DNA from: Rebecca billardiae RCC1528
Taxonomy: Eukaryota; Protista; Haptophyta
Assembly (NCBI GenBank): GCA_965240325.2
Contig: OZ251248.1
Span: 62,001-126,000 of the forward strand
DNA: 64,000 nucleotides
Direction: 5' to 3'
The notes under the pieces are model-generated. The model was not told the origin of the DNA and searched no databases. It saw only the letters and a program-made list of their open reading frames with translations. Shown here piece by piece: positions 9,517 to 23,100 of the stretch; within the stretch, counting starts at the first letter, position 1; each line of letters starts with the position of its first letter. The translations under genes and the position numbers were made by a program.

Positions 9517-11912
9517 GCTCGGCGCGCCCGGCCGCAGCGTGCGCGCGCCGCTGCTCGTGCCCCCCGGTGGCCGCGCCGCCGCCGGCGGCGCGTCGCTGTC
9601 GCTCGGCGTCGGCGGCGTCGACGGCGGCGGCGCGTGCGGCGGCGGCCATGCTGGTTGGGGCGGCGCGGGCGCGCAGCCGCAGCCGCTGCAGCACGCGGCG
9701 GGCTCGCCGTCGAGCGTGCGGCTGGACGCGCGCGAGCGCGCGCTGCTCGAGCTGCTCTCGGGCCCGTGCGCGATGCCGCTCCACGTCCTCGAGACCGCCG
9801 TCAGCTCGGACGCTCACCAGCTCGGCCTCGTGCGAGCGTTTGTGAGCGCAAAGCCGCCGCCGCCGCCGGCGGGAACGGCGGCGGCGGCCGTCTCGGCGGG
9901 CGGCGGCGGTGGTGATGGGGGCGGCGGTGGCGGTGCCGCGCCGTGCCGCGTGCTGCTCCTCTACCGCTCGGCCGAGCGCGACGCGTCGGGCCTGCTGCGC
10001 GAGCGCGCCCTCGTCTCGCGCCCCGGCGGCGCCGTGCCGTCGGCGTTTGCATCGGAGCTGGTCGCACTGGTCGTGCGCGTCACGCCGGCGGAGCAGCAGG
10101 CGGCGCAGGGGCTGCCGCCGCCGGCGGGCGGGGCGTGCGGCTCGCTCGGCGGCGGCGGCGGCGGCGGCCTCGGCGGCGCCACCGCCGGCGGCTCGACCGC
10201 GCTCGTGCTGAGCGCGCCCGGCGGCGGCGGCGCGGCCGCGGGCGGCGCGCTCGCGCCTTACGGCGTGGGCGCGGGCGGCGCGTCCGCGGCGGCGGGCGGG
10301 CTGGGCGGGCTGGGCGTGCTGGCGTCCGCGGCGTTCGCGGACGAGCGCGCCGACGCGCCGATCCCCAGCGCGCGCGACGTGCGCCACTGCGTCTCCATCG
10401 CCGTGCTCGCCGCGGGGCGCGCGGCGCTGCCGTCGCCGCGCGCCGACGCGGGCCTCGCGCCGCGCGGCCGCGGCGGCGGCGGCGCGGCCGGCGGCGGCGG
10501 CGCGGCGGGCGGGCTGGGCGGCGGCGCGGGGTTCCCCGTGCTCGGCGCCGAGTCGCCGCTCGCGCAGCCCCTCGCCGCGGCGCAGGCGCTCCTCTCGCAG
10601 CTCTACCTGCCCCTCCTCGGCGCGATGCTCCGCACGGCCAACCGCGCGGCCGCGCAGCACCCGACGCGGCGCGCGGCCGCGGCGCTCGCCGACGGCGGCG
10701 GCGGCGGCGGCGGCGTCGGCGGCGGCGGCGCGCGGCTGCTGCGCGGGCCGGAGGGCGGCGGCGGCGAGGGCGGCGCGCCGGTGCTCGCGCGGTACGACGG
10801 CGGCGGCGCCGGCGCCGGCTCCGCCGGCCGCGCCGTCCGCGCCGCGCAGCGCGCCGCCGCCAAGCAGGCCGAGGCGGCCGCGCGCATCGCCGACGCGCTG
10901 CTCGCACTGCGGCAGCAGCTTGTGCGCGCAGCCGAGAAGCTGAGCGAGGCGTCGGACTGCATGACGCTGACGTTCCACCTGCACGCGCCCGAGATGGACG
11001 GCGTGCCGCTCGCCGACTTCCCCGCGCACGTCCTCGCCGAGGCGCTCGGCCCGCCGCCGCCGCTCTCGCCGCGCGCCGGCGGCGGCGGCGGCGGCGCGTG
11101 CGGAGCGTTCGCTCTGGTCTCGGCGGTCGCGGCGTCCGTCGGCCCCGCCGGCTCGCCCTCGGGTGCGGAGGGCGGCGAGGAGGCGGGGCTGGAGGCGGAG
11201 GGGTCGGGCGTCGGCCCGTCCGCCTCCGCGCTCGGCGGCGCGCCCTCTGCGCAGCCCTCCGCCCTCTCCGACGCGCCCTCCGCCTCCGCCGCCGCCGCGG
11301 GCCCGCAGCCGTCCGCGCTCGCGCGGCTGCCGTCATGCTGCGCGTCCGCGTGCGGCGGCCATGCTGACGGCTCGGTGGCGACGGCGCACACGGCGAACTC
11401 GGGCGGCGGCGGCGGCGGTGGTGGCGGCGGTGGCGGCGGCGGCGGCGCGCGCGCCGCGCCGCCCGTCTCCGCGCGCGAGCTCCTCGCCCGCCTCGACGGC
11501 CCCGACGACTTTGCGATGGCGGCCGACGCGCCGCGCATCGGCGACTACTGCGCGCGCGTGCTCGGCGCGTGGCTGCACGAGCTGCGCGGCGCGCTCGAGC
11601 TCGGCGGCGCGAGCGGCGCGGCGATCGTGGCGCAGCCGCCGCCGCCGTCGCCGCCGGCCGCGGCCACGCGCACCGACTCGCCCGGCGGCGCCGCCGTCGC
11701 CGCGGCCGCGGCCGCGGCCGCGGCCGCGGCCGGCGGCGCGCGCGCGCCGCGCCCAAGCCTCCGGCTGAGCACCGCGGCGGGCGGCGGCGGGCCGGCGGCG
11801 GGGAGCGCCGCGCCCTCGCCCGCGCCGTCGCGCACCGTGTCGGCGGGCGCGGCGGTGGCGGCGCGCCGCTTCTCCGTCGAGTCGGCGGGCGCGTTTGGCG
11901 TCGCGCACACGC

Positions 11913-11950
<38 letters not shown>

Positions 11951-12150
11951 GCGTCCGGCGGCGGCGCCGGCCCCACGCAGATCCGCGTGCACCCGGTCGC
12001 GGAGGGCGACGAGGAGGAGGAGGGCGGCGGCGTCGGCGGCGTCGGCGTGGGCGTGGGTCCGGGCGTGGCGGGCGAGGAGGAGGACGACGCGGCGAGCGGC
12101 TCCGCGGGCGGCGCGGGCTCGGCCGGCGCGGGCTCGGCGCACGCGGACGA

Positions 12151-12188
<38 letters not shown>

Positions 12189-14999
12189 GCGGCGGCGGCG
12201 AGGGCGGCGAGGGCGAGGAGGCGGACGGCGACGACGACGACGACGACGACGATGGCGGCGGCGGCGTCGACGCGCGCGCGGCCGACGCGGACGGCGCGGG
12301 CGCGGATGGCGGCGTGGCGCCGGGCGGCGGCTCGATGCGGCGGCGGGTGCGGCGCCGGCCCCGCGCCGACGGCGGCGGCTCGGACGCGAGCAGCTCGGCC
12401 GGCGGCGGCAGCAGCTTTGCGCGCACGCCGCGCGGCGGCGGCGGCGTCGGCGTCGGCGTCGGCGGCGTCGGCGGCGGCGTGGGCGGCGGTAGTGGCGGCG
12501 CCGACGCGCTCGGCGCGGCGCGCGGCGCGGCGGCCGCGGCCGCTGCGGCGATGGCGGAGGCGGGCCTCGCGGCGGACGGCGCGGATGATGGCGAGGACGA
12601 GCGGTTCGCAGAGCCGGCGGGGTACGCGGCGGAGGCGGCCGACGCCGACGCCGGCCCGCTCGTCGAGCTGGAGTACTGGCGGCGGCGGATGGGCGCGATG
12701 CTGCAGATCGAGCAGCAGCTGCGCTCGCGCGAGGCGGTCGCCATCGTCGGCGTCGTGCTGCACTCGGGCCGCCGCTTCCGCGAGCTCGCGCGCCGGTGGC
12801 AGGACCTCGTGTTCGGCGTGACGGACGCGGCGAACGAGGCGAAGGACAACGTCAAGTACCTCACGCTGCTCGAGCCGCAGCTGCGCGCGCTGTACGGCGG
12901 CTCGCTCGGCGCGATGGCCGAGGCGGTCGCGCCCCTCACCGAGCAGCTCAAGCTGGTCGGCACCGTGTCGCGCCACTACAACACGACGGAGCGGCTGGCC
13001 AACCTGCTGCACCGCGTGGTGCACCAGACGGTGCGCAACATGCGCGCGTGCCTCGAGCCCGCCGGCGGCCCCGCGCTGCTCCGGCAGCACCCCGCGCCCG
13101 CGCTCGAGCGGCTCTCGGAGGCGCAGGCGCTGTGCCGCTCGCTCGAGGCGGCGGTGCGCCGGCTCGCGGCCGAGCTGCCCGCCGGCCGGCTGGGCGGCGG
13201 CGAGCTCGACGCGCTGCTCGCGCCGCTCGAGATCTTCGCGCACCGGCTGGAGCAGCTGGGCACGGTGCTCTCCACGTGCCTCCAGTTCGCCGAGCTCGGC
13301 ACGATGCGCGTCGACGGCCTCGCCGAGCTCGCCGCGCTCTTCCGCGCGGCGCTGCGCGTGCTGCACGGCCGGCACGCGGCGGTGCTCGACACGTCCAACG
13401 CGCGCTTCGAGATCGACTTTTACCACTTTTTGGTGGTGGTGCGCAACCTGGAGAGCACGCTGCAGTCGTACATCAACGCGCGGTTCGACAACACGCGCAA
13501 CACCGAGGCCGCGCTCCAGCTGCTCTCGCAGTTCTCCGGCCTGCTGCGCGCGGGCGTCGTGCGCGACGACCTCTCGTCCAAGCTGGCGGTGATCTTCTCG
13601 GCGTACGCGCTCGACCTCGAGGACGTGCAGGCGCTGTACGAGGCGCACAAGGGGCGGCCGCCGTGCCCGCGCGGCTTCCCGCCCGTCGCGGGGCGCGTCG
13701 TGTGGGCGCGCCAGCTCCTCCGCCGCATCGAGCAGCCCATGCGCTACTTTGGCGCGCACGAGGCGCTGATGCGCGCGCCCGACTCGCGCAAGATTGTAAG
13801 GCAGTACAACCGGGTCGCGCGCGTGCTCGTGCAGTTCGAGGGGCTGTGGGTGGGCGCGTGGGCGCGCGGCGTGCCCGCGGTGCGCCGCGCGCTCGACGCG
13901 ACGCTGCTCGTGCGCGACCCGTCCGACGGGTCGCTCCACGTCAACCTCGACCCGGCGGTGCCGCAGCTGCTCGCCGAGGCGCGCCACCTGCTGCGGCTGG
14001 GCGAGGCCGTGCCGGCAGACGCGCTCACGCTGCTGCACGCGGCGCCGCGGCTGCGCGCGCACGCGAACGCGCTGGCGCACGCGCTGGGCGTGCGCGCGCG
14101 GCTGGGCTCGGCGCTGCCCGCCGAGCTGCGCCCGCTCCTCAAGCCGCACGTCGACGCCGTCGACGCCGTCCTCGCCGAGGGCACGGTCGCGCACACGTGG
14201 GCGGGCGCAGACACCTACTTCTTCCTGAGCGGCCTCGGCGGCGCGCTCGCCGACCTCGAGACGCTCGTGGGCAAGGTGAAGGCGGTGGCGGAGGTGCAGC
14301 TGCACCGCTCGCTGCGCAGCATGGCCGCCGCGCAGCTCGTCTCGCTGCCGTCCGAGGGCACCGTCGCGCTCGCCGAGTTTGTCGCCGTGCAGGTGAGCGC
14401 GGCGCCGTGTTGTCTCGTGTGTGTGCGTGGAGTGTGCGCGCGTGCGTGTGCGCGCGTGTTGTCTCGTGTGTGCGCGTCGAGTGTGCACGCGTGTGGAGTG
14501 TGCGCGCGTGCGTGTGCGCGCGCGTTGTCGTCTTTGAGCGTTGAGCGTGCGCGTGTGCGTGTTTGTGTGTGTGCGTGCCAGTGCGCGCGCGCGGCGGCGA
14601 GCGCGCACGTGCGCGCGGGCTGCGCGGCTCACGCGGCGCGCGCGCGCGCGCACCCGCCCGCCCGCCGCAGCGCGAGTCGTGCGCGCGCGCGGCCGCGCTG
14701 CTCGACGCCAAGTCGGAGGAGGCGGAGCGCGCGGTCAACCTGCTCTTCGAGATGGCGGCGGAGGCGCCGCTCGGCGGGCGGCGCGTGCCGGTCGAGCCGG
14801 GCGCGATGGCGGCCGTGCGGCGGCACTACGCCGAGCTGTGCGAGCACGCGGTGCTGAGCGCGGTGCGCGCCGCGCTCAAGGCGCTGCACGAGCGGCTCAC
14901 CGTGCGCGGCGGCGCGGCGCGGCTCGGCGCCGTCGGCGGCGGCGGCGGCGCGCTCGTCGGCGCTGGCGGCGGCGGCGGCGGCGGTGCCGCCGCCGCGGC

Positions 15000-15032
<33 letters not shown>

Positions 15033-18000
15033 GCGCGGCGGCGGCGCGGCCAAGCCGGGCGGCGGCGGCGGCGCGCGCGCGCCGCCGCCCGGCGCGGCCG
15101 CGCCGTCCGCGCCCGCGGCGCACGCGCGCGCGCTCGCGCCGCCCGCGCCCACACCCGCCCAATCGGCACCCGCCGGCGTCGCCGGCCGGTCCGGCGCGGT
15201 CGGCCCGCCGATGCCGCCCGTCGGCGGCTTCCTGTGGACGCAGCGGCCGTTTTTCGAGGTGCACGTCGAGCTGAGCGTGCCCGCCGTCTCCATCGTGCCG
15301 TCGGTGGACGCGGTGCAGGGTGCGGTGAACGGCGCGGCGCGCGAGGTGCTCGGCGTCGCGCGCGCGCTGCAGCCGTGGAGCTGGCCCGAGTCGATCGCCG
15401 AGCAGCTGCAGGCGGCGGACGCGGCGCACGCGCGGCTGGACGCGTCCGCGGCCGCCGCGCGCGCGCACTCCATACTCGCCCCGTCGGGCGGCGGCGGCGG
15501 CGGCGGCGAGGAGGAGGGCGCGCTCCATCACTCATCGGAGTACGGTGGCGGCGGCGGCGGGCTTGGCGCGGCCTCGCCGCTCGCGCGCACGCCCGCGCGC
15601 TCGCCGATGCGCTCGCCGTCCGCGCGCGGCGGCGGGCTGGGCGCGCACTGGGGCTCTGCCTCGGAGCGCGGCGGCGGCGGCGACGACGGCGGCGGCGGCG
15701 GCGGCGTTCTGCTCAGCCGCGCGGAGCGGCAGCGCCTGCAGCAGGCCGTGGCCGACGGCGCGTTCATCCGGTGCGCGCGCGCGCGCCGAGATCGCAACCT
15801 CGCGCCCGCGCGCGCCGACGCGACCGCCGCCGCCGCGCGCCCGACTGAGCGCGCGCGCCCACGCGCCGCCGCCGCCCGCCGCGCGCGCGCGCGCGGCGCA
15901 GGCGCGCGCGGCAGCTCTTCGACGCGGCGGCGCACGCCGAGGCCGCGGCGCGCGCGTCCGCCGCCGCGCCCGCGCCCGCCGAGCCCGCCGGCGGCTCGGC
16001 GGCGGCGCGCCCGCCGGCGGCGCGCGCGCGCGCGCCCGCCGGCCGCGAGATTGCAATCTCGCGGCAGAACTCGCCGCCCGCGCTCGCGGTCGTGGTGCCG
16101 GGGCGCGAGATTGCAATCTCGAAGGAGTCGATGCGCGCGACGCTGCTCGCCGAGCTGCTCCACGGCGTGCCCGGCCACGGCGGCGGCGCGCACCCCGCGC
16201 ACGCGCACGGCCACGCGCACGGCCACGGCGGCGGCGCGGGCGGCGCCGACTGGCTGCGCGATGAGTCGGGCGGGCCCTCGGCCGGCGGCGGCGGCGGTGG
16301 TGGCGGTGGCGGCGGCGGCGCGGCCGCGCCGCGCTCGCCCGCGCCGGCGCGCAGCCCGCGCCCGTCGGGCAGCTTCAGCGCGGCGCGGCGCGCGCCGTCG
16401 CCCGCCGCCGCCGCCGCCGCGGCCGCGGCCGCCGGCGCCAAGCCCGCCCACGCGGCGCGCGCGCTCGGCGGCGCGGCCGCGGCGGGCGCGGGCGCGGGCG
16501 CGCAGCAGCAGCAGCAGCAGCAGCAGGCGCAGCAGCAGGCGCAGGCGAGCGCGTCCGCCGCGGTGGCGCGCGAGCGCGCGGCGGCGGTCGCGGCGATCGA
16601 GCGGCGGCTCGGCGCGGCACTCGCGCGCTCGGACCGCGACCACTCGGGCGACGTGACCTTTGCCGAGTTCCTCGCCACGTGCAAGCGGCTCTCGCGCCGC
16701 GCGTCCTTCTCGATGCTGCCGCGCGTCGGCTCGGACATGTCGGTTGTGGTGGCGGTGCTGCGGCTGGCGGGCGGGCTGCACGGTCTCAAGCTGGCGGTGG
16801 ACGCGCACACGGCCACGTTCGCAGACTTCTCGCACCTGTGGACCGCGTCGGTGCGCGAGGAGGTGGGAGCATTCGTCGCGGGCTCGCCGCGCCCCGAGTC
16901 GTTCGTCGCGCAGCTCGACGGCTACGGCGGGCTGGACGCGCGGATCGCGCGGCTGGCGCCCGTGCACACGGCGGGGCCCTTGTCCCTCAACGCGACCCAC
17001 CTCAAGGTGGCGCTGCGCGCGGAGTGCGCGGCGTGGCGCGCGGCGTACGCGGCGGAGCTGCACGCCATCGCCAAGGCGCGGCTCGAGACGCGCCTCGCGC
17101 ACTTTGCCGAGTGCCGCCGCCACCTCGGCCGCGAGATTGGCCACCTGCTGCTCGCCGCCGAGGCGGGCGGCTCGGGCGGCGCGGCGGCGGGGCAGCCCGC
17201 GGCCGACGAGGCGGGCGGCGGCGGCGGCAGCGGCGGCGGCGGCGGGCTGCTGGGCACGTCGCTGCTGTCGGAGGTGCGCGCGCTGCTGCACGCGGTGCGC
17301 ACGATGCACGCGGCGGACGAGGCCGTCGACCACGACGTCTCGCGCCTCGAGGAGCTGTACGGCCACCTCGCGCGCCACGCGGGCGCGGCGGACGTGCCGC
17401 GCGCCGAGCTGGACGCGGTCGACGAGCTGCGGCATGAGTGGCGTGTGCTGCGCGCGCGCGCGGATGAGCGCTCGGCGGAGATGTCGGGGCTGCAGGAGCG
17501 GCTGCACGCGCAGCTGCTCGGCGCGCTGCGCACGTTCACGGCCGAGCTGCGCGCGCTCGGCGCCGAGTTCGACGCCGCCGGGCCCATGTCCGCGGGCATC
17601 TCGCAGGGTGAGGCGCGCGCGCGCCTCTCGCGGTTTGCTGCGTCCGCGGACAACAGGGCGCTGCAGCTGCGCGAGCTGAACGTGGGCGAGGCGCTGTTCG
17701 GGCTGCAGCCCACGTCGGCGCTCGAGCTGGGCGAGATCCAGCGGCAGTGCGCGCTGTGCGAGCGCGTCCTCGGCCTCGAGGCCGAGCTCGAGCGCACCGT
17801 CGTCCGCCACCTCGACGCGCCATGGGCGCAGGCGGCCGAGCGGCTGTCCGACGGCGCGTTTGGGAACGCGGTCGCGTCGATCGCCGGCCTCGCCGCCAAG
17901 CTGCCGCCCGAGGCGCGGCGCGCGCCGGCGTCGGCGCGGCTGCGGCGCACGCTCGAGGCGATGCGCTCGGTCGTGCCGCTGCTGCAGGCCCTCGCGCACC

Positions 18001-18273
18001 CCGCCATGCGCCCGCGCCACTGGGAGGCGCTCTCGCAGCTGTGCGGCCTGCCAGAGCCGCTGCGGCCGCGCGAGCCGTCGCTCACGGCGCGCGCGCTGCT
18101 CGACGCGGGCGTGCGCCTCCGCTCGGCGGAGGTGCTCGCGCTGTGCCACACGGCGCGCGAGGAGGCGGCGCTCGAGGCGCGGCTCGACTCGACCGTCTCC
18201 GACTGGTGGTCCGCCTCGCTCGCCCTCACGCACCCGTATGCGCCCGGCGGCGCGCCATCCGGCGGCGGCGCGG

Positions 18274-18314
<41 letters not shown>

Positions 18315-19737
18315 GACGGGCGCGCGCTGCTCGACCTCGACGCGGCGCTGGAGCAGCGCGCGCGGATCGACGACGCGCTGGCCGAGCTCGCGTCGATCAC
18401 CGCCTCGCGCTACGGCGAGCCCTTCGCCGCGCGCTGCGCCGACGCGATGGCGCGGCTCGGCGCGGTCGGCGAGCTGCTCGACGCGTTCACGCGCGCGCAG
18501 CGCGCCTACGTGCGGCTGGCGCCGCTGTTCAGCGCGGCAGACGTGGCGCGCTCGCTGCCGCGGCAGGCGAAGGTGTTCGAGGCGGCGGAGCGCGGGTGGG
18601 ACAAGCTGCTCCGCCGCGCGGCCGACTCGCCCGCGCTCGTCTCCCTCGCCGACGCCGACTCCGCGCTGCTCCACGCCATCGAGCACGTGCTCGCGCAGCT
18701 CGAGTCGTGCGCGCGCGCACTGTCCGCGTACCTGCACGCCAAGCGGCGGGTGTTCCCAAGGCTCGGGCTGGTGGGCGACGCGGCGCTGCTCGAGCTGCTC
18801 TCGCAGGCGGGCGCGCAGCCCGCGGCGGTGCTCGGGCCGCAGATGCCCGCGCTCTTCGACGCGGCGACGCGGCTGCTCCTCGTCGACGACTCGAGCGCGC
18901 TCGCGCCCACCACCGCCGCGGCCGGCGGCGGCGGCGGCGGCGGCGCGGAGGGCTCGGCAGAGGAGCGTGCGGCGGCGGCCGCCGCGACCGCCGCGCGGCG
19001 CGTGCGCTCGCACGCCGCGGGCGGCGGCGGCGGCGGCGGCGCGCGAATCGGCGGCGGCGGCGGGCCGGGCGGCGGCTCGCACAAGCCGCCGCCCCTCTGG
19101 CGCATCGTCGGCCTCGCCGACGCGGCGGGCGAAGTGCTCGCGCTCGCGCCGCCCGCGCTCACCATGGCCGCGGGCGCGCGCGGTCGCGCGGCCGCGGCCG
19201 CGGCGGCGCACGCCGACGGCGGCGGCGCGGCGGCGCACGCGGCGGGGGCGGGCCCGCCCTCCGCCGCGCAGCCCGCGCCGCCCGCCGCGCTCCCGTCCAT
19301 CGGCGACGCCACCGTCGCCGTGACGGTCGCTGAGGTGGACGCTGAGTGCGCGGAGCACGGCGCGCGCGTCGCGCCGCCCGGCGCGCCCGGCTCGGGCGGC
19401 GCGCGCGCGCAGGCGCTGGCCGCGCTGGGCGCGGCGGCGGGCGGCGGGCTGGGCGGCGCGGGCGCGCTCACCGCCGCGGGCGCGACCACGCGCGAGGTGG
19501 GCATCGAGGTGGCCGGCCCCGTCGAGGGCTGGCTCGCGCGCGCGCTGCACCTCGCGCGCTGCGTGCTGCGCGCGCACTGCCGCGCGGCCGCGGCGGACGC
19601 GCTCGACGGGCTCGGCGTCGCCGCGTCGACGCCCGAGGCGCTGGCGGAGCCGCACGTGCCCGCGCAGGCGGCGGCGCTGTGCCTCGCGCTGCGCTTCGAC
19701 GCGGAGGTCACCGACGCGCTCGGCGCGATGGCGGCGA

Positions 19738-20176: not shown

Positions 20177-23100
20177 CGGCGGTGCCAAGGGGTGCGGCTG
20201 CGGCCCAAAGCCGGGCGGCGGCGGCGCGAGCAGTGCGGTGATCAGCTCCGCCGTCGAGCGGCGGCAGGCGGTGGACGCGGAGCGCGCGGTCGGGCGCGGG
20301 CCGGGCGGCGGCAAGGCGGCGGCGGCGGCGGCGGCGGCCGCGGCGCAGTCGCAGGCGGAGGCGCGCGCGGCGGCGGGCTCGATGCAGCTGCTCGCGCCCG
20401 GCGGCGTCGCGGTGGAGTGCGGCTTCGAGTGGGCCGGCGGCTTCGGCGCCGGGCTCGCGCAGCACGGCGGCTCCGCCGGCGGTTACGCCGGCGGTTACGC
20501 GTACGTGTGCGGCGGGTACGGCGGGTACGTGCTCGGCGCGGGCACGGCGCGCGCGCAGCTCGCGCTCGCGCACGCGCTGCGCGACCTGCGCGCCGTCTCC
20601 GTCGTGAACGCGGGCGGGCCGTCCGTCGCGCCCGTCGGCGTCGGCCGCGCGTCCACAGTGCGCGCGCTCGCCGCCGCGGCGGGGCGTCTGTGCGTCACCG
20701 TCACGGCCGCGCCCGCGGGCGCGGCGGCGCTGCCGCGGCTGCTCGCCGCGGCGGCGGGCTCGGGCGCGTGGCTGCTGGTGCGCGAGCTCGAGCACGCCGC
20801 GCCGCCCGCCGCGCTCGCGACGCTCTCCCTCGGCCTCGCCGCCGCGCTCGGCGCGCTGCGCGCCAAGGCGCGCTCCTTTGTCGACCCGAGCGCGCCCGCG
20901 CCCGCCAACGGCGCGGACTGGGGCGCGGCCGCGCTCGTCTCGGGGCGGAGCGGCGGCGCGTCCGACCCGGCCGCGAGCCCGGTGCTGCTCGCGTACCCGT
21001 TCGCGTGCGCGCTCACGCTGCCCGCGCCGATGGGCGCGGGCCGCGCGCCGCTGCCGCCCGCGCTGCGCGCGCTCCTCCGGCCGGTGGCGCTGGTGCCGCC
21101 GCACCCGCCAGCGCTCGCGGCCGCGCTGCTCGGCGCCGCCGGCTTTGCCGACGCGCCGGCGCTGTGCGCGCAGCTCGGCGCGGCGTGCGCGTTCGCCGCG
21201 CACGCGCTCTGCGCGCCGCACAAGACGGCCGACGGCTACGCCGGCGTGCCCACGCGCGGCGGTGTGATGCACGCCGACCTCACCAAGGGCCAGCTGCTCA
21301 ACGCGCACACCGCCGCGCGCGCGGCGCACGGCGCGGCCGAGGCGCGGCGCGCGCACGGCGCGCGCGCGGCGGCGGCGGCGCTCGCGGCGGGCGCGCGCGA
21401 CGACGGCCCCGCGGCGGCGGCGGCGGCGGCGCTCGGCGCGGCCACGCCCGAGCTCGAGCGCGCCTGGCTCGCCGAGGGCTGGCGCCGCGCGGTGAGCGCG
21501 CGCCTGCCCGCCGCGGACGCGGCCGCCGCCACGCAGGCCGTGAGTGCGTACCTGCTCGCCGAGCGGCCGCCGCACGCGCCCGCGCCGCCGGGCGGCGCGG
21601 ACGGCGGCGGCGCGAGCGGCGGCGGCGGCGCGGCGGCGGCGGGCGGGCCGACGACGGGGCGGCGCTCGCCGCCCACCGTCGTCGCGCCCGCCGAGGCGGC
21701 GGAGGCCGTGGGCGCGCCCGCCGCGGCCGCGCCGCCGTCCGCGGCCGGCGCTTTGCCCGCGGGCGGCGGCGGCGCGGGCGGCGGCGGCGCGGCCGCCGCG
21801 CCGCTCGCGGCCGTGGGCGGCAAGGGCGGCGAGGGCGGCGGCGTGGGCGCGGCGCAGCGCGCGGCGCTGCTCGACGCGCTGCGCCGGCCCGACGCGCTCG
21901 CCACCGCGCCGCCCGCCGCGCCGCTGCCGCCCGCGCCCGCGCCCGCGGCCGCGGCCGCGGCGGCCGGCACCGGCCGCGGCGGGCCGGCGGTGGCGCGGCG
22001 CGCGGCCGAGCAGCGCGCGGCCGAGCGCGCGCTCGCGCGCGCGGCGGAGCGCGGCGCCGCGAGCCTGCGCGCGCCGCCGCTGCGCGAGGCGGAGGCCTTC
22101 GTCGCGGCGTGCGAGGCGCTGCACGCCGCCGCGTCCGCGCACGCGTGCGTCATCGTCTGCGGCGAGGCGGGCTCGGGCAAGACTGAGGGTACGCGCGCGG
22201 TGCTGCGCATGCGCACGCGGCTGCTGCACGCGCCGCCGCCGGGCGGCGCGCACGCGCGCCGCGGCTCGTCGCACCGCGGCACGAACGCGCCGGGCGGCGG
22301 CGGCGGCGGCGGCGGCGCGCGCCGCGGCCGCGCCGCCGCCGCCGCCGCCGCCGCCGCGCAGTGGCGCGAGTGCCGCGTGTACACGGGTGCGCTCTCAACC
22401 GCCGCGCTGCTCGGCGGCACGCACGCGCGCCACCGCGAGTGGGCGGACGGCGCGCTCACCGCGGCGTGGCGCGCCGCGCTGGAGGAGACGAGCGCGGCCG
22501 CGGCGGTCGGCGCGGGCGGCGGCGTGTGGCTCGTGCTCGACGGCCCGCTCGCCTCCGCTGGCGCCGCCGCGTCCGCGGGCGGCGCGGGCGGCGGGCTCTC
22601 GTCCGAGGTCGCGCTGCTCGAGGTCGGCGCGGCGCTGCGCTCGCCCAAGCCGACGCTCGCGCTGGGCAACGGCGACCGGCTGCCGCTCACCGCGGGGATG
22701 GGCGTGCTCTTCGAGACCGACTCGATCGCGCACGCCGCGCCCGCCGCGCTCTCGGGCTGCGCCCTCGTCCAGTTCGGCCCTGAGCTGCCGTGGCGCGCGC
22801 CGTGGGCGCGCTGGCTGGCGGCACATCCGTTGCTCTCGCCAAAGCAGCGCGCGACGCTTGCCTCGCTGGCGGACACGTACTTGGGCGTGGCGGGTGCGCC
22901 GGGCGGGGGCGGCGGCGGCGCGGCGGCGGCGGGGGCGCACGGCGGGCAGCACCCGCCGCCGCAGCCGCACGCGCGCGGCGGCGGCGGCGCGCTCGCCGTC
23001 GCCGCGCTCGCGTGCGGCCCCACGGCGCTCCCGCAGACGGACGGCGCGCGCGTGTGCACGCTCACCGCGCTCATCGACGCGCACCTCGCGGACGCGCACG

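What the first reader, a model, noticed from the sequence alone, without database searches (positions are those of the whole stretch)
16590..16700. Canonical EF-hand embedded in the dynein heavy chain tail
Seen: DRDHSGDVTFAEF is a textbook EF-hand loop and forms a high-complexity island in Ala/Gly sequence between DHC_N1 and the linker. Known: Ca2+ control of outer-arm dynein normally acts through separate EF-hand proteins (LC4, calaxin, DC3). Inference: built-in Ca2+ sensing plus a dead AAA1 suggests a Ca2+-switchable microtubule cross-linker. If the host is a haptophyte, the Ca2+-dependent haptonema is a speculative candidate site. Only one EF-hand was seen.
Basis: partly seen in the sequence, partly recalled or inferred. 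Interest (0 to 1): 0.75.

Follow-up and report, generated by a model that had tools for sequence, protein, structure and literature searches.

The report
Built-in EF-hand in a dynein tail
A giant flagellar-type dynein gene of a very GC-rich alga carries one textbook calcium-binding loop in its tail, kept almost unchanged in the only relative found, probably at the spot where other algae dock a separate calcium-sensor protein; calcium binding itself is untested.

Summary
DRDHSGDVTFAEF (window 16632-16670, frame of the 8,068-codon ORF) matches PROSITE PS00018. It is the only match in six frames of the window and the only relaxed EF-loop in the whole dynein gene. About 0.003 matches are expected by chance in that ORF.

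It is more than a chance motif. One relative exists, a 964-bp JGI metagenome contig. It has DRDQSGDVSYAEF at the same place, inside a clean exon joined directly to conserved tail sequence. The 35-codon EF-hand is 71% identical, against 47-62% for the flanking tail. Its non-synonymous divergence is half that of the tail (Fisher p = 0.017).

A two-sequence profile hits almost only EF-hand proteins in the PDB. AlphaFold2 gives helix, 9-residue loop, helix with canonical boundaries, at low confidence. Pfam EF-hand_1 stays below its cut-off, and no partner hand exists.

The host gene belongs to the outer-arm gamma/DNAH5 family and has degenerate AAA1 Walker motifs. The EF-hand ends a roughly 400-residue insert in a loop that is 11-19 residues long in Chlamydomonas and Tetrahymena. 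By my inference this loop is the helical-bundle 6/7 junction, where the light chain LC4 binds.

Calcium binding, expression and location are untested. The cross-linker and haptonema ideas have no support. Earlier notes of this scan cover the same gene (size, dead AAA1); none shown to me covers the EF-hand.

The parts
16632..16670 (+). EF-hand Ca2+-binding loop. The 12 loop residues DRDHSGDVTFAE are at 16632-16667; the following Phe completes the 13-residue PS00018 match.
   Evidence: Pattern match, unique in six frames of the window. Candidate ligand positions 1, 3, 5, 9 and 12 are D, D, S, T, E, with Gly at 6 and Val at 8. All are kept in the relative, with T changed to S at position 9.
16500..16631 (+). 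Entering (E) helix. Its conserved part is 16593-16631 (AIERRLGAALARS); the model extends it back through an Ala/Gln run.
   Evidence: AlphaFold2 helix 2-24 in model 1 and helix 200-245 in model 2, with pLDDT 72-87. The residue just before the loop is Ser, not the usual hydrophobic one. Pfam aligns only from profile position 8.
16659..16700 (+). Exiting (F) helix, FAEFLATCKRLSRR. It starts at loop position 10, as in canonical EF-hands.
   Evidence: AlphaFold2 helix 34-47 and helix 253-266, pLDDT about 60-66. 11 of 14 residues are identical in the relative.
15385..16730 (+). Lineage-specific insert of about 400 residues between two conserved tail segments. It is mostly Ala/Gly/Pro/Gln/His low complexity, with the EF-hand at its C-terminal end. 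It includes a tentative GT-AG intron at 15771-15901 that moves the frame from 1 to 0.
   Evidence: The flanks align to Chlamydomonas gamma-HC 889-941 and 953 onward, so the loop there is 11 residues. GC3 stays at 0.93-1.0 in frame 1 and then frame 0. AlphaFold2 pLDDT is about 30 over most of the insert. The intron is inferred from frames only.
15226..15384 (+). Conserved tail segment upstream of the insert (PFFEV...PSVDAVQGAVN...), reading frame 1.
   Evidence: phmmer to Chlamydomonas gamma-HC 889-941, E = 7e-8, and to Tetrahymena Dyh3 918-969. Assignment to helical bundle 6 is my inference.
16731..17741 (+). Conserved tail helical bundles between the EF-hand and the linker.
   Evidence: 293 dynein relatives align from here on. 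It aligns to gamma-HC 953-1241. AlphaFold2 pLDDT exceeds 90, and Foldseek's top hits are outer-arm heavy-chain tails.
12644..14203 (+). DHC_N1 domain of the same gene.
   Evidence: Pfam PF08385, E = 1e-112.
17736..18887 (+). DHC_N2 (linker) domain of the same gene.
   Evidence: Pfam PF08393, E = 6e-52.
20409..21251 (+). AAA1 region with degenerate Walker A (GKT to GRA) and Walker B (DE to RE).
   Evidence: phmmer alignments to human DNAH10 and DNAH3. Only one G-x4-GK[ST] motif exists in the ORF, at residue 2024, which is downstream of AAA1.
14370..14600 (+). T-rich intron without codon periodicity, between the DHC_N1 exon and the next exon. It shows what introns look like in this gene.
   Evidence: T fraction 0.23-0.31 and no GC3 periodicity. 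The protein sense of the frame is lost here.

Best explanation
This is a genuine, translated, single canonical EF-hand (helix, 12-residue loop, helix). [quoted passage not shown] The exiting helix runs, after a 4-residue turn, straight into the next conserved tail bundle. The insert occupies a loop that is only 11-19 residues long in Chlamydomonas and Tetrahymena. By my inference this loop is the junction of helical bundles 6 and 7, the flexible junction where the separate calmodulin-like light chain LC4 docks on the Chlamydomonas gamma chain. Proposed mechanism (inferred, not shown): Asp1, Asp3, Ser5, the backbone of residue 7, Thr9 and Glu12 of the loop bind Ca2+. The resulting change in the angle between the two helices is passed to the adjoining bundle and alters tail geometry, or the docking of a partner, at this regulatory junction. 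A lone EF-hand normally needs a partner hand, so it probably pairs in trans, with an EF-hand of a light chain or of another heavy chain. Shown: the motif, its coding context, its conservation and constraint in one relative, its EF-hand sequence affinity, and the host family. Inferred: Ca2+ binding, the bundle 6/7 assignment, trans pairing, and any effect on motility.
For: - The PS00018 match is unique in the window and in the gene, with a chance expectation of about 0.003.
- The only relative covering the site (P0015, locus L001) keeps all ligand positions (DRDQSGDVSYAEF). There the motif lies in an exon with a pyrimidine tract and CAG acceptor 13 codons upstream, and it is contiguous with conserved tail sequence.
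- Three exons of L001 align to the window at 47-71% identity, so it is the same gene lineage.
- The EF-hand is 71% identical, with pN 0.18 against 0.32 in the remaining 144 aligned codons at equal pS (0.45 vs 0.44); Fisher p = 0.017.
- A profile of the 37-residue region hits, among its best 50 PDB matches, only EF-hand proteins: CDPK calmodulin-like domain at 2.8e-8, then CML18, calcineurin B, ALG-2, troponin C, calmodulin, centrin. ESM-Atlas feature neighbours are EF-hand clusters.
- Two AlphaFold2 runs give helix, loop, helix with the exiting helix starting at loop position 10.
- Frame-0 GC3 of 0.93-1.0 is continuous across 15850-17100, unlike the real intron at 14370-14600.
- Host family: the best PDB matches are Chlamydomonas gamma-HC, DNAH5 and Tetrahymena Dyh3.
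- Junction mapping: the flanks align to gamma-HC 889-941 and 953 onward. LC4 binds at the bundle 6/7 junction, whose loops are unmodelled because flexible (PMC7817835 and its supplement). Tetrahymena beta-HB6 includes residues 952-973 and LC4A binds alpha-HB6 (bioRxiv 10.1101/2020.12.08.415687). About three bundles' worth of helices lie between the site and DHC_N2.
Against: - Pfam EF-hand_1 is below its gathering score in both sequences: 16.4 and 19.7 bits against 25.4.
- The entering helix is atypical, with Ser instead of a hydrophobic residue before the loop and a Gly in mid-helix.
- No partner hand exists anywhere in the gene.
- AlphaFold2 confidence over the loop is below 50-60.
- Conservation rests on a single relative of unknown organism, with near-saturated and GC-biased synonymous sites.
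- No RNA run was listed, so translation and splicing in this genome are inferred.
- None of the other relatives listed from the exhaustive search (the best 150 of 293) has the motif, so it is not needed for dynein function in general.
- The bundle 6/7 assignment rests on transferring residue numbers, not on coordinates.
Confidence: 0.55

Rival explanations
1. It is a structural helix-loop-helix only. The sequence descends from an EF-hand, or converged on one, and is kept because it packs against the tail or binds a partner. It does not sense Ca2+ physiologically: either it does not bind, or it is always occupied by Mg2+ or Ca2+.
For: It is a lone hand without a partner. Pfam is sub-threshold and the entering helix is atypical. 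AlphaFold2 confidence is low. Unpaired EF-hands generally bind weakly (established knowledge of the family).
Against: Every ligand position, Gly6 and the hydrophobic position 8 are canonical and are kept across roughly 45% synonymous divergence. The substitutions seen (H to Q, T to S, F to Y) are the kind that EF-loops tolerate.
Confidence: 0.27
2. It is a chance match to a permissive pattern inside a fast-evolving low-complexity insert, with no function.
For: PS00018 is known to give false positives.
Against: It is conserved in L001 at 71% identity with lower pN than the adjoining conserved tail. The profile hits EF-hand proteins almost exclusively. The flanking low-complexity sequence is not conserved, whereas this island is.
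Confidence: 0.05
3. The stretch is not part of the mature protein in this genome. It would be an intron or an alternatively skipped segment that stays open only because stop codons are rare at 85% GC.
For: At this GC content, long ORFs arise by chance on both strands. No RNA evidence could be obtained. At least one frame change, probably an intron, lies upstream at about 15771-15901.
Against: In the less GC-rich relative, the motif sits in a clearly bounded exon fused to conserved tail codons. Frame-0 GC3 is 0.93-0.97 with GC2 of 0.53-0.57 over the motif, unlike the aperiodic, T-rich true intron. There is no AG at the position homologous to the relative's acceptor, so the window's exon simply extends further upstream.
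Confidence: 0.07
4. One reading: the dead-AAA1 dynein is a Ca2+-switchable microtubule cross-linker, possibly working in the haptonema.
For: AAA1 Walker motifs are degenerate while stalk/MT-binding Pfam domains remain. Haptonema coiling depends on Ca2+ and its mechanism is unknown (PMC6398456).
Against: There are no localisation or binding data. The gene is of the axonemal outer-arm gamma family. No dynein-like structures have been seen in haptonemata (PMC6398456). By my own recollection, not checked here, pavlovophytes have a reduced, non-coiling haptonema.
Confidence: 0.05

Closest known systems
LC4 / LC4A, the calmodulin-like Ca2+-binding light chain of outer-arm dynein (Chlamydomonas, Tetrahymena)
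   Same: EF-hand chemistry acting on the tail of the same heavy-chain family. LC4 docks at helical bundle 6 and the bundle 6/7 junction, which is, by inference, where this insert lies. Ca2+ changes the tail conformation through LC4 (PMC7817835; bioRxiv 10.1101/2020.12.08.415687; PMC10886578).
   Different: LC4 is a separate polypeptide with paired hands (three EF-hand motifs plus one degenerate helix-loop-helix). Here a single hand is encoded within the heavy chain itself. No homology to LC4 in particular was shown; the nearest sequence matches are CDPK-type hands.
Calaxin, the opisthokont neuronal-calcium-sensor-type regulator of outer-arm dynein
   Same: A Ca2+ sensor that binds the stem of the orthologous heavy chain and modulates the motor (PMC4415241).
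   Different: It is a separate protein with several hands, restricted to opisthokonts, and not an insertion in the heavy chain.
DNAHX (and possibly DNHD1), non-motile heavy chains derived from the outer-arm alpha (= Chlamydomonas gamma) lineage in animals
   Same: Derived from the same heavy-chain family. AAA1 motifs are poorly conserved. The protein is much enlarged by many disordered insertions, including a prominent one in the tail (PMC11785096).
   Different: It is an animal lineage. Neither 'EF-hand' nor 'calcium' occurs in that paper's text. Its stalk/MTBD is disrupted, whereas here Pfam still detects stalk domains. A common origin is unlikely and was not tested.
EF-hands of the calmodulin-like domain of plant and alveolate Ca2+-dependent protein kinases (PDB 2aao, 1s6i)
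   Same: They are the closest sequence matches to the loop plus exiting helix, for example D-x-D-x-SG-x-[IV]-x-[FY]-x-EF-[IL]-AA.
   Different: Those hands come in two pairs fused to a kinase. Each hand alone matches the profile only weakly (single-hand E-values of about 3-11).

Membership tests
Canonical EF-hand (PROSITE PS00018 / Pfam PF00036) | 12-residue loop with oxygen ligands at positions 1, 3, 5, 7 (backbone), 9 and 12; Gly at 6; hydrophobic residue at 8; Glu or Asp at 12 | tested here: met
   DRDHSGDVTFAE fits PS00018 in full. The relative has DRDQSGDVSYAE.
Canonical EF-hand (PROSITE PS00018 / Pfam PF00036) | Loop flanked by an entering and an exiting alpha-helix, the latter starting at loop position 10 | tested here: met
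   Two AlphaFold2 models give helix, 9-residue coil, helix with the exiting helix starting at position 10. pLDDT is only about 50-70 in this part.
Canonical EF-hand (PROSITE PS00018 / Pfam PF00036) | Score at or above the Pfam EF-hand_1 gathering threshold | tested here: not met
   16.4 bits (window) and 19.7 bits (relative) against a cut-off of 25.4; E = 0.0064 and 0.00058. The entering helix does not match the profile.
Canonical EF-hand (PROSITE PS00018 / Pfam PF00036) | Occurs as a pair of hands forming one domain | tested here: not met
   There is no second strict or relaxed loop in the whole gene. Upstream sequence is predicted disordered and downstream sequence is dynein tail. Pairing in trans cannot be tested here.
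Canonical EF-hand (PROSITE PS00018 / Pfam PF00036) | Binds Ca2+ | not testable with these tools
   This needs ITC, 45Ca overlay or Tb3+ luminescence on a recombinant fragment.
Outer-arm dynein heavy chain, gamma (Chlamydomonas) / alpha (Tetrahymena, sea urchin) / DNAH5-8 family | Dynein heavy-chain architecture: DHC_N1, DHC_N2, AAA modules, stalk | tested here: met
   Pfam DHC_N1 1e-112, DHC_N2 6e-52, AAA_6, MT stalk, AAA_9.
Outer-arm dynein heavy chain, gamma (Chlamydomonas) / alpha (Tetrahymena, sea urchin) / DNAH5-8 family | Closest to gamma-type chains rather than to beta-type, inner-arm or cytoplasmic chains | tested here: met
   The best PDB sequence matches over tail and linker are 7kzm_C (gamma-HC, 4e-63), DNAH5, trypanosomatid ODA-alpha and Tetrahymena Dyh3. 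The next families score 1e-28 or worse. Foldseek agrees. No tree was built.
Outer-arm dynein heavy chain, gamma (Chlamydomonas) / alpha (Tetrahymena, sea urchin) / DNAH5-8 family | Catalytically competent AAA1 (Walker A GKT, Walker B DE) | tested here: not met
   GKT is replaced by GRA and DE by RE in the alignment to DNAH10 and DNAH3.
Dynein Ca2+-sensor light chains (LC4, calaxin, DC3) | Separate small EF-hand protein that binds the dynein or its docking complex | tested here: not met
   The hand is encoded within the heavy-chain reading frame. It may work like these sensors, but it is not a member of that group.

The most novel reading that the evidence does not exclude
The heavy chain has internalised its own Ca2+ switch at the bundle 6/7 junction. 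This is the regulatory hot spot that binds LIC in cytoplasmic dyneins, the third heavy chain's kelch domain on the beta chain, and LC4 on the gamma chain. The lone hand would pair in trans with the unpaired hand of an LC4-like light chain, or replace LC4. Ca2+ would then bend the tail of a non-hydrolysing, still microtubule-binding outer-arm-type dynein. The result would be a Ca2+-set brake or strut in the pavlovophyte flagellum: the first dynein heavy chain that senses Ca2+ directly.
Probability: 0.2. Interest if true: 0.75.

Novelty: new variant of a known kind. Interest (0 to 1): 0.55.

Why it matters
In every system described so far, Ca2+ control of outer-arm dynein works through separate EF-hand subunits: LC4, calaxin and DC3. 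How their signal reaches the motor is still unclear. A heavy chain with a conserved EF-hand wired directly into the tail, probably at the very junction where LC4 docks, would be a natural fusion experiment. It would point to that junction as the place where Ca2+ information enters the heavy chain. It would also give a small, expressible fragment (the EF-hand plus the next bundle) in which Ca2+-driven tail bending could be measured. Finally, it adds a regulatory feature to the emerging class of non-motile dyneins derived from outer-arm chains (DNAHX in animals). The evidence is computational and rests on two sequences, so this is a lead and not a result.

Tried and rejected
- RNA evidence: the look-up of sequencing runs listed no run for 14000-19000. 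Read laying was therefore never used, and splicing could not be checked.
- More relatives:
  - Two metagenome scans found nothing confirmable. One was seeded on the EF-hand peptides, the other on the adjoining tail peptides.
  - The word-index search with the 119-residue profile returned only P0015.
  - P0015's own cluster has one member.
  - A search of the full ORF restricted to residues 150-950 was meant to list the Pfam architectures of full-length relatives.
- Cluster look-ups of ten top hits gave no useful taxonomy, so I did not verify the organism.
- Partner hand: strict and relaxed loop patterns, Pfam, and a 613-residue AlphaFold2 model of the whole frame-0 exon start found none.
- MAFFT first forced the EF-hand onto the unrelated PSL..IQ..IN segment of the homologues. 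I trimmed the homologues and realigned before folding.
- Exact residues of the IQ motifs and LC4 contacts on the gamma chain: Sakato et al. 2007 is not held, and the supplement of PMC7817835 gives no numbers. The bundle 6/7 mapping therefore stays an inference.
- P0104 and P0038 aligned early in the query, but by low complexity only; they lack the motif.
- Papers: four searches found no dynein heavy chain with an intrinsic EF-hand. This library is incomplete.
Full report
**What is at the coordinates**

The window is 62-89% GC in 2-kb bins. It holds one giant dynein heavy-chain gene:
- Pfam finds DHC_N1 at window 12644-14203.
- DHC_N2 is at 17736-18887.
- Weaker AAA_6, stalk (MT) and AAA_9 hits follow, all in the same orientation.

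From 16092 to 40298 a single 8,068-codon frame is open. In that frame, window 16632-16670 encodes DRDHSGDVTFAEF.

A regular-expression scan with the PROSITE PS00018 pattern finds this site and no other in all six frames of the 64 kb. From the ORF's own amino-acid composition, 0.002 matches are expected in the ORF; 2,000 shuffles gave a mean of 0.0035. A much looser EF-loop pattern also finds only this site in the three reading-frame segments that make up the gene. The observation, including 'only one EF-hand', is therefore confirmed.

Pfam is less generous. EF-hand_1 scores 16.4 bits (E = 0.0064) on an 82-residue piece, below the 25.4-bit gathering score, and aligns only from profile position 8 onward. 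The reason is visible in the sequence. The loop and exiting helix are textbook. The entering helix has Ser where a hydrophobic residue usually precedes the loop, and it has a Gly in the middle.

**Is it coding?**

At this GC content stop codons are rare, and long ORFs appear on both strands. An open frame therefore proves nothing, and no RNA run could be listed for the region. Two other lines of evidence help.

1. Codon periodicity. The real intron after the DHC_N1 exon (about 14370-14600) is T-rich (0.23-0.31) and aperiodic. From about 15850 to beyond 17100, the third position of frame 0 is 93-100% GC, while the second position drops to 53-57% over the motif.
2. The relative described next, which is far less GC-rich, carries the motif inside an unmistakable exon.

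Upstream, the gene reads in frame 1 (14640 to about 15790) and then in frame 0. A GT-AG intron at 15771-15901 (131 nt) would make that change. It is only a model.

**Conservation**

An exhaustive HMMER search was run with the 394 residues from window 16560 to 17741 against 1.84 billion representative proteins. It gave 293 hits, of which the best 150 are listed. Nearly all listed alignments start at query position 43-56 or later, which is just after the EF-hand; they are dynein tails.

Only one hit truly covers the hand. P0015 is a 178-residue call from a 964-bp JGI metagenome contig, fetched here as L001. It reads DRDQSGDVSYAEF, so every ligand position, Gly6 and Val8 are kept.

On the contig, a pyrimidine tract and CAG acceptor lie 13 codons before the loop. 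The exon then runs without interruption through the hand into the conserved tail sequence and ends at a CAG|GTGTGT donor. Two further exons of the contig align to the window at 59% and 62% identity, across two introns that the window lacks. It is therefore the same gene lineage.

Over 35 codons the EF-hand is 71% identical, against 47-62% for the rest. A Nei-Gojobori count gives:

| Segment | pN | pS |
|---|---|---|
| EF-hand, 35 codons | 0.18 | 0.45 |
| Other aligned tail, 144 codons | 0.32 | 0.44 |

The Fisher test on non-synonymous changes gives p = 0.017. The hand is thus the most constrained part of what can be compared.

Further relatives were sought with two metagenome scans and a word-index search, and none was found. 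The evidence for constraint therefore rests on two sequences.

**Is it an EF-hand?**

- A profile of the 37 aligned residues of the two sequences, searched against all PDB chains, returns only EF-hand proteins among its best 50 matches. These include CDPK calmodulin-like domains (2.8e-8, summed over their four hands), CML18, calcineurin B, ALG-2, troponin C, calmodulin and centrin. Matches to a single hand are individually weak.
- ESM-Atlas feature neighbours are EF-hand clusters at 0.91-0.92, with few shared features, so this is only a lead.
- AlphaFold2 with a trimmed 27-sequence alignment predicts helix 2-24, coil 25-33 and helix 34-47. The exiting helix starts at loop position 10, as in canonical hands. 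pLDDT is 49-72 there and above 90 in the following tail.
- A second model of the whole frame-0 exon start (613 residues) gives the same local picture. It has a long entering helix through the Ala/Gln run (pLDDT 72-87), disorder over most of the insert, and nothing that looks like a partner hand.

**The host and the place**

Tail and linker match Chlamydomonas outer-arm gamma-HC best (7kzm_C, 4e-63). DNAH5, trypanosomatid ODA-alpha and Tetrahymena Dyh3 follow, and other dynein families score 1e-28 or worse. Foldseek on the model agrees.

AAA1 is degenerate. In the alignment to DNAH10 and DNAH3, Walker A GKT reads GRA and Walker B DE reads RE.

The conserved segment upstream of the insert (window 15226-15384) aligns to gamma-HC 889-941 and Dyh3 918-969. 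The segment right after the hand aligns to gamma-HC 953 onward and, through the 4,615-residue hit P0010, to about residue 989. The loop between them is 11-19 residues long in those species. Here it is about 400 residues, with the EF-hand as its last ordered element, four residues from the first helix of the next bundle.

Which junction is this? The evidence is indirect:
[quoted passage not shown] They note that the loops there are unmodelled because flexible (PMC7817835 and supplement).
- Rao et al. place LC4A on alpha-HB6 and give residues 952-973 for part of beta-HB6.
- The numbering of the alpha and beta chains differs by about 22 in the linker.
- About three bundles' worth of helices lie between the insertion point and DHC_N2 in the model.

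From these I infer, with perhaps two-in-three confidence, that the insert sits in the bundle 6/7 junction loop, the LC4 and LIC site. I could not check this on coordinates.

**Mechanism**

The most likely reading is a cis-encoded Ca2+-binding hand whose helix re-orientation acts on the adjoining bundle, or on a docked partner, at a known regulatory junction. A lone hand probably needs a partner in trans. Ca2+ binding, pairing and any effect on the flagellum are all inferred.

The main rival is a structural relic that no longer senses Ca2+. Chance and non-translation are now unlikely.

The gene family is axonemal, and no motor-like structures have been seen in haptonemata (PMC6398456).

**Comparison and novelty**

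Known Ca2+ sensors of outer-arm dynein (LC4, calaxin, DC3) are separate proteins (PMC4415241). The animal non-motile DNAHX shares the parent family, the degenerate AAA1 and the many insertions. A search of that paper's text for 'EF-hand', 'calcium' and 'Ca2+' found none of them (PMC11785096). Four full-text searches found no dynein heavy chain with an intrinsic EF-hand.

I rate this a new variant of a known kind, of moderate interest. It is clearly real and conserved, and its location is mechanistically suggestive. It is known from only two sequences and has no functional data.

**Limits**

- I did not verify the organism; other notes of this scan call it a pavlovophyte.
The HB6-insert-HB7 unit was never modelled as one chain.
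- One large protein search timed out.

Noticed in passing
window 16046-16061, 16106-16121 and 15787-15802: The perfect 16-bp palindrome CGAGATTGCAATCTCG occurs twice, 60 bp apart, with a 2-mismatch copy 260 bp upstream. About 0.11 matches (at up to 3 mismatches) are expected in the window by chance; 4 were found. In frame 0 the copies read REIAIS, inside the tail insert.
   Followed up: partly
window 16120-16165 versus 16728-16780: KESMRATLLAELLHG in the insert resembles the conserved tail helix SDMSVVVAVLRLAGGLHG that follows the EF-hand. This may be a partial internal duplication flanking the insert. AlphaFold2 gives it a helix after a small hairpin, at pLDDT of only 44-51.
   Followed up: no
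window about 16180-16235: A His-rich run (HPAHAHGHAHGHG) lies in the insert. It is low-complexity sequence that could bind metal.
   Followed up: no
window 16695-16706: RRAS, a basic-kinase (PKA-type) consensus, follows the exiting helix directly. It is not kept in the relative, which has RRHMHS.
   Followed up: no
window 20409-21251: AAA1 Walker A reads GRA in place of GKT, and Walker B reads RE in place of DE, when aligned to DNAH10 and DNAH3. The only G-x4-GK[ST] motif in the ORF is at residue 2024 (window 22161), downstream of AAA1.
   Followed up: partly
L001 471-579 and 682-782: The metagenomic relative has two short introns in the tail, one of them starting with a (GT)n run, that the window's gene lacks. 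The window's copy is intron-poor and much richer in GC (about 80% against 66%).
   Followed up: partly
window about 11900-12100: A long Asp/Glu/Gly acidic run lies in the N-terminal part of the same gene, upstream of DHC_N1.
   Followed up: no
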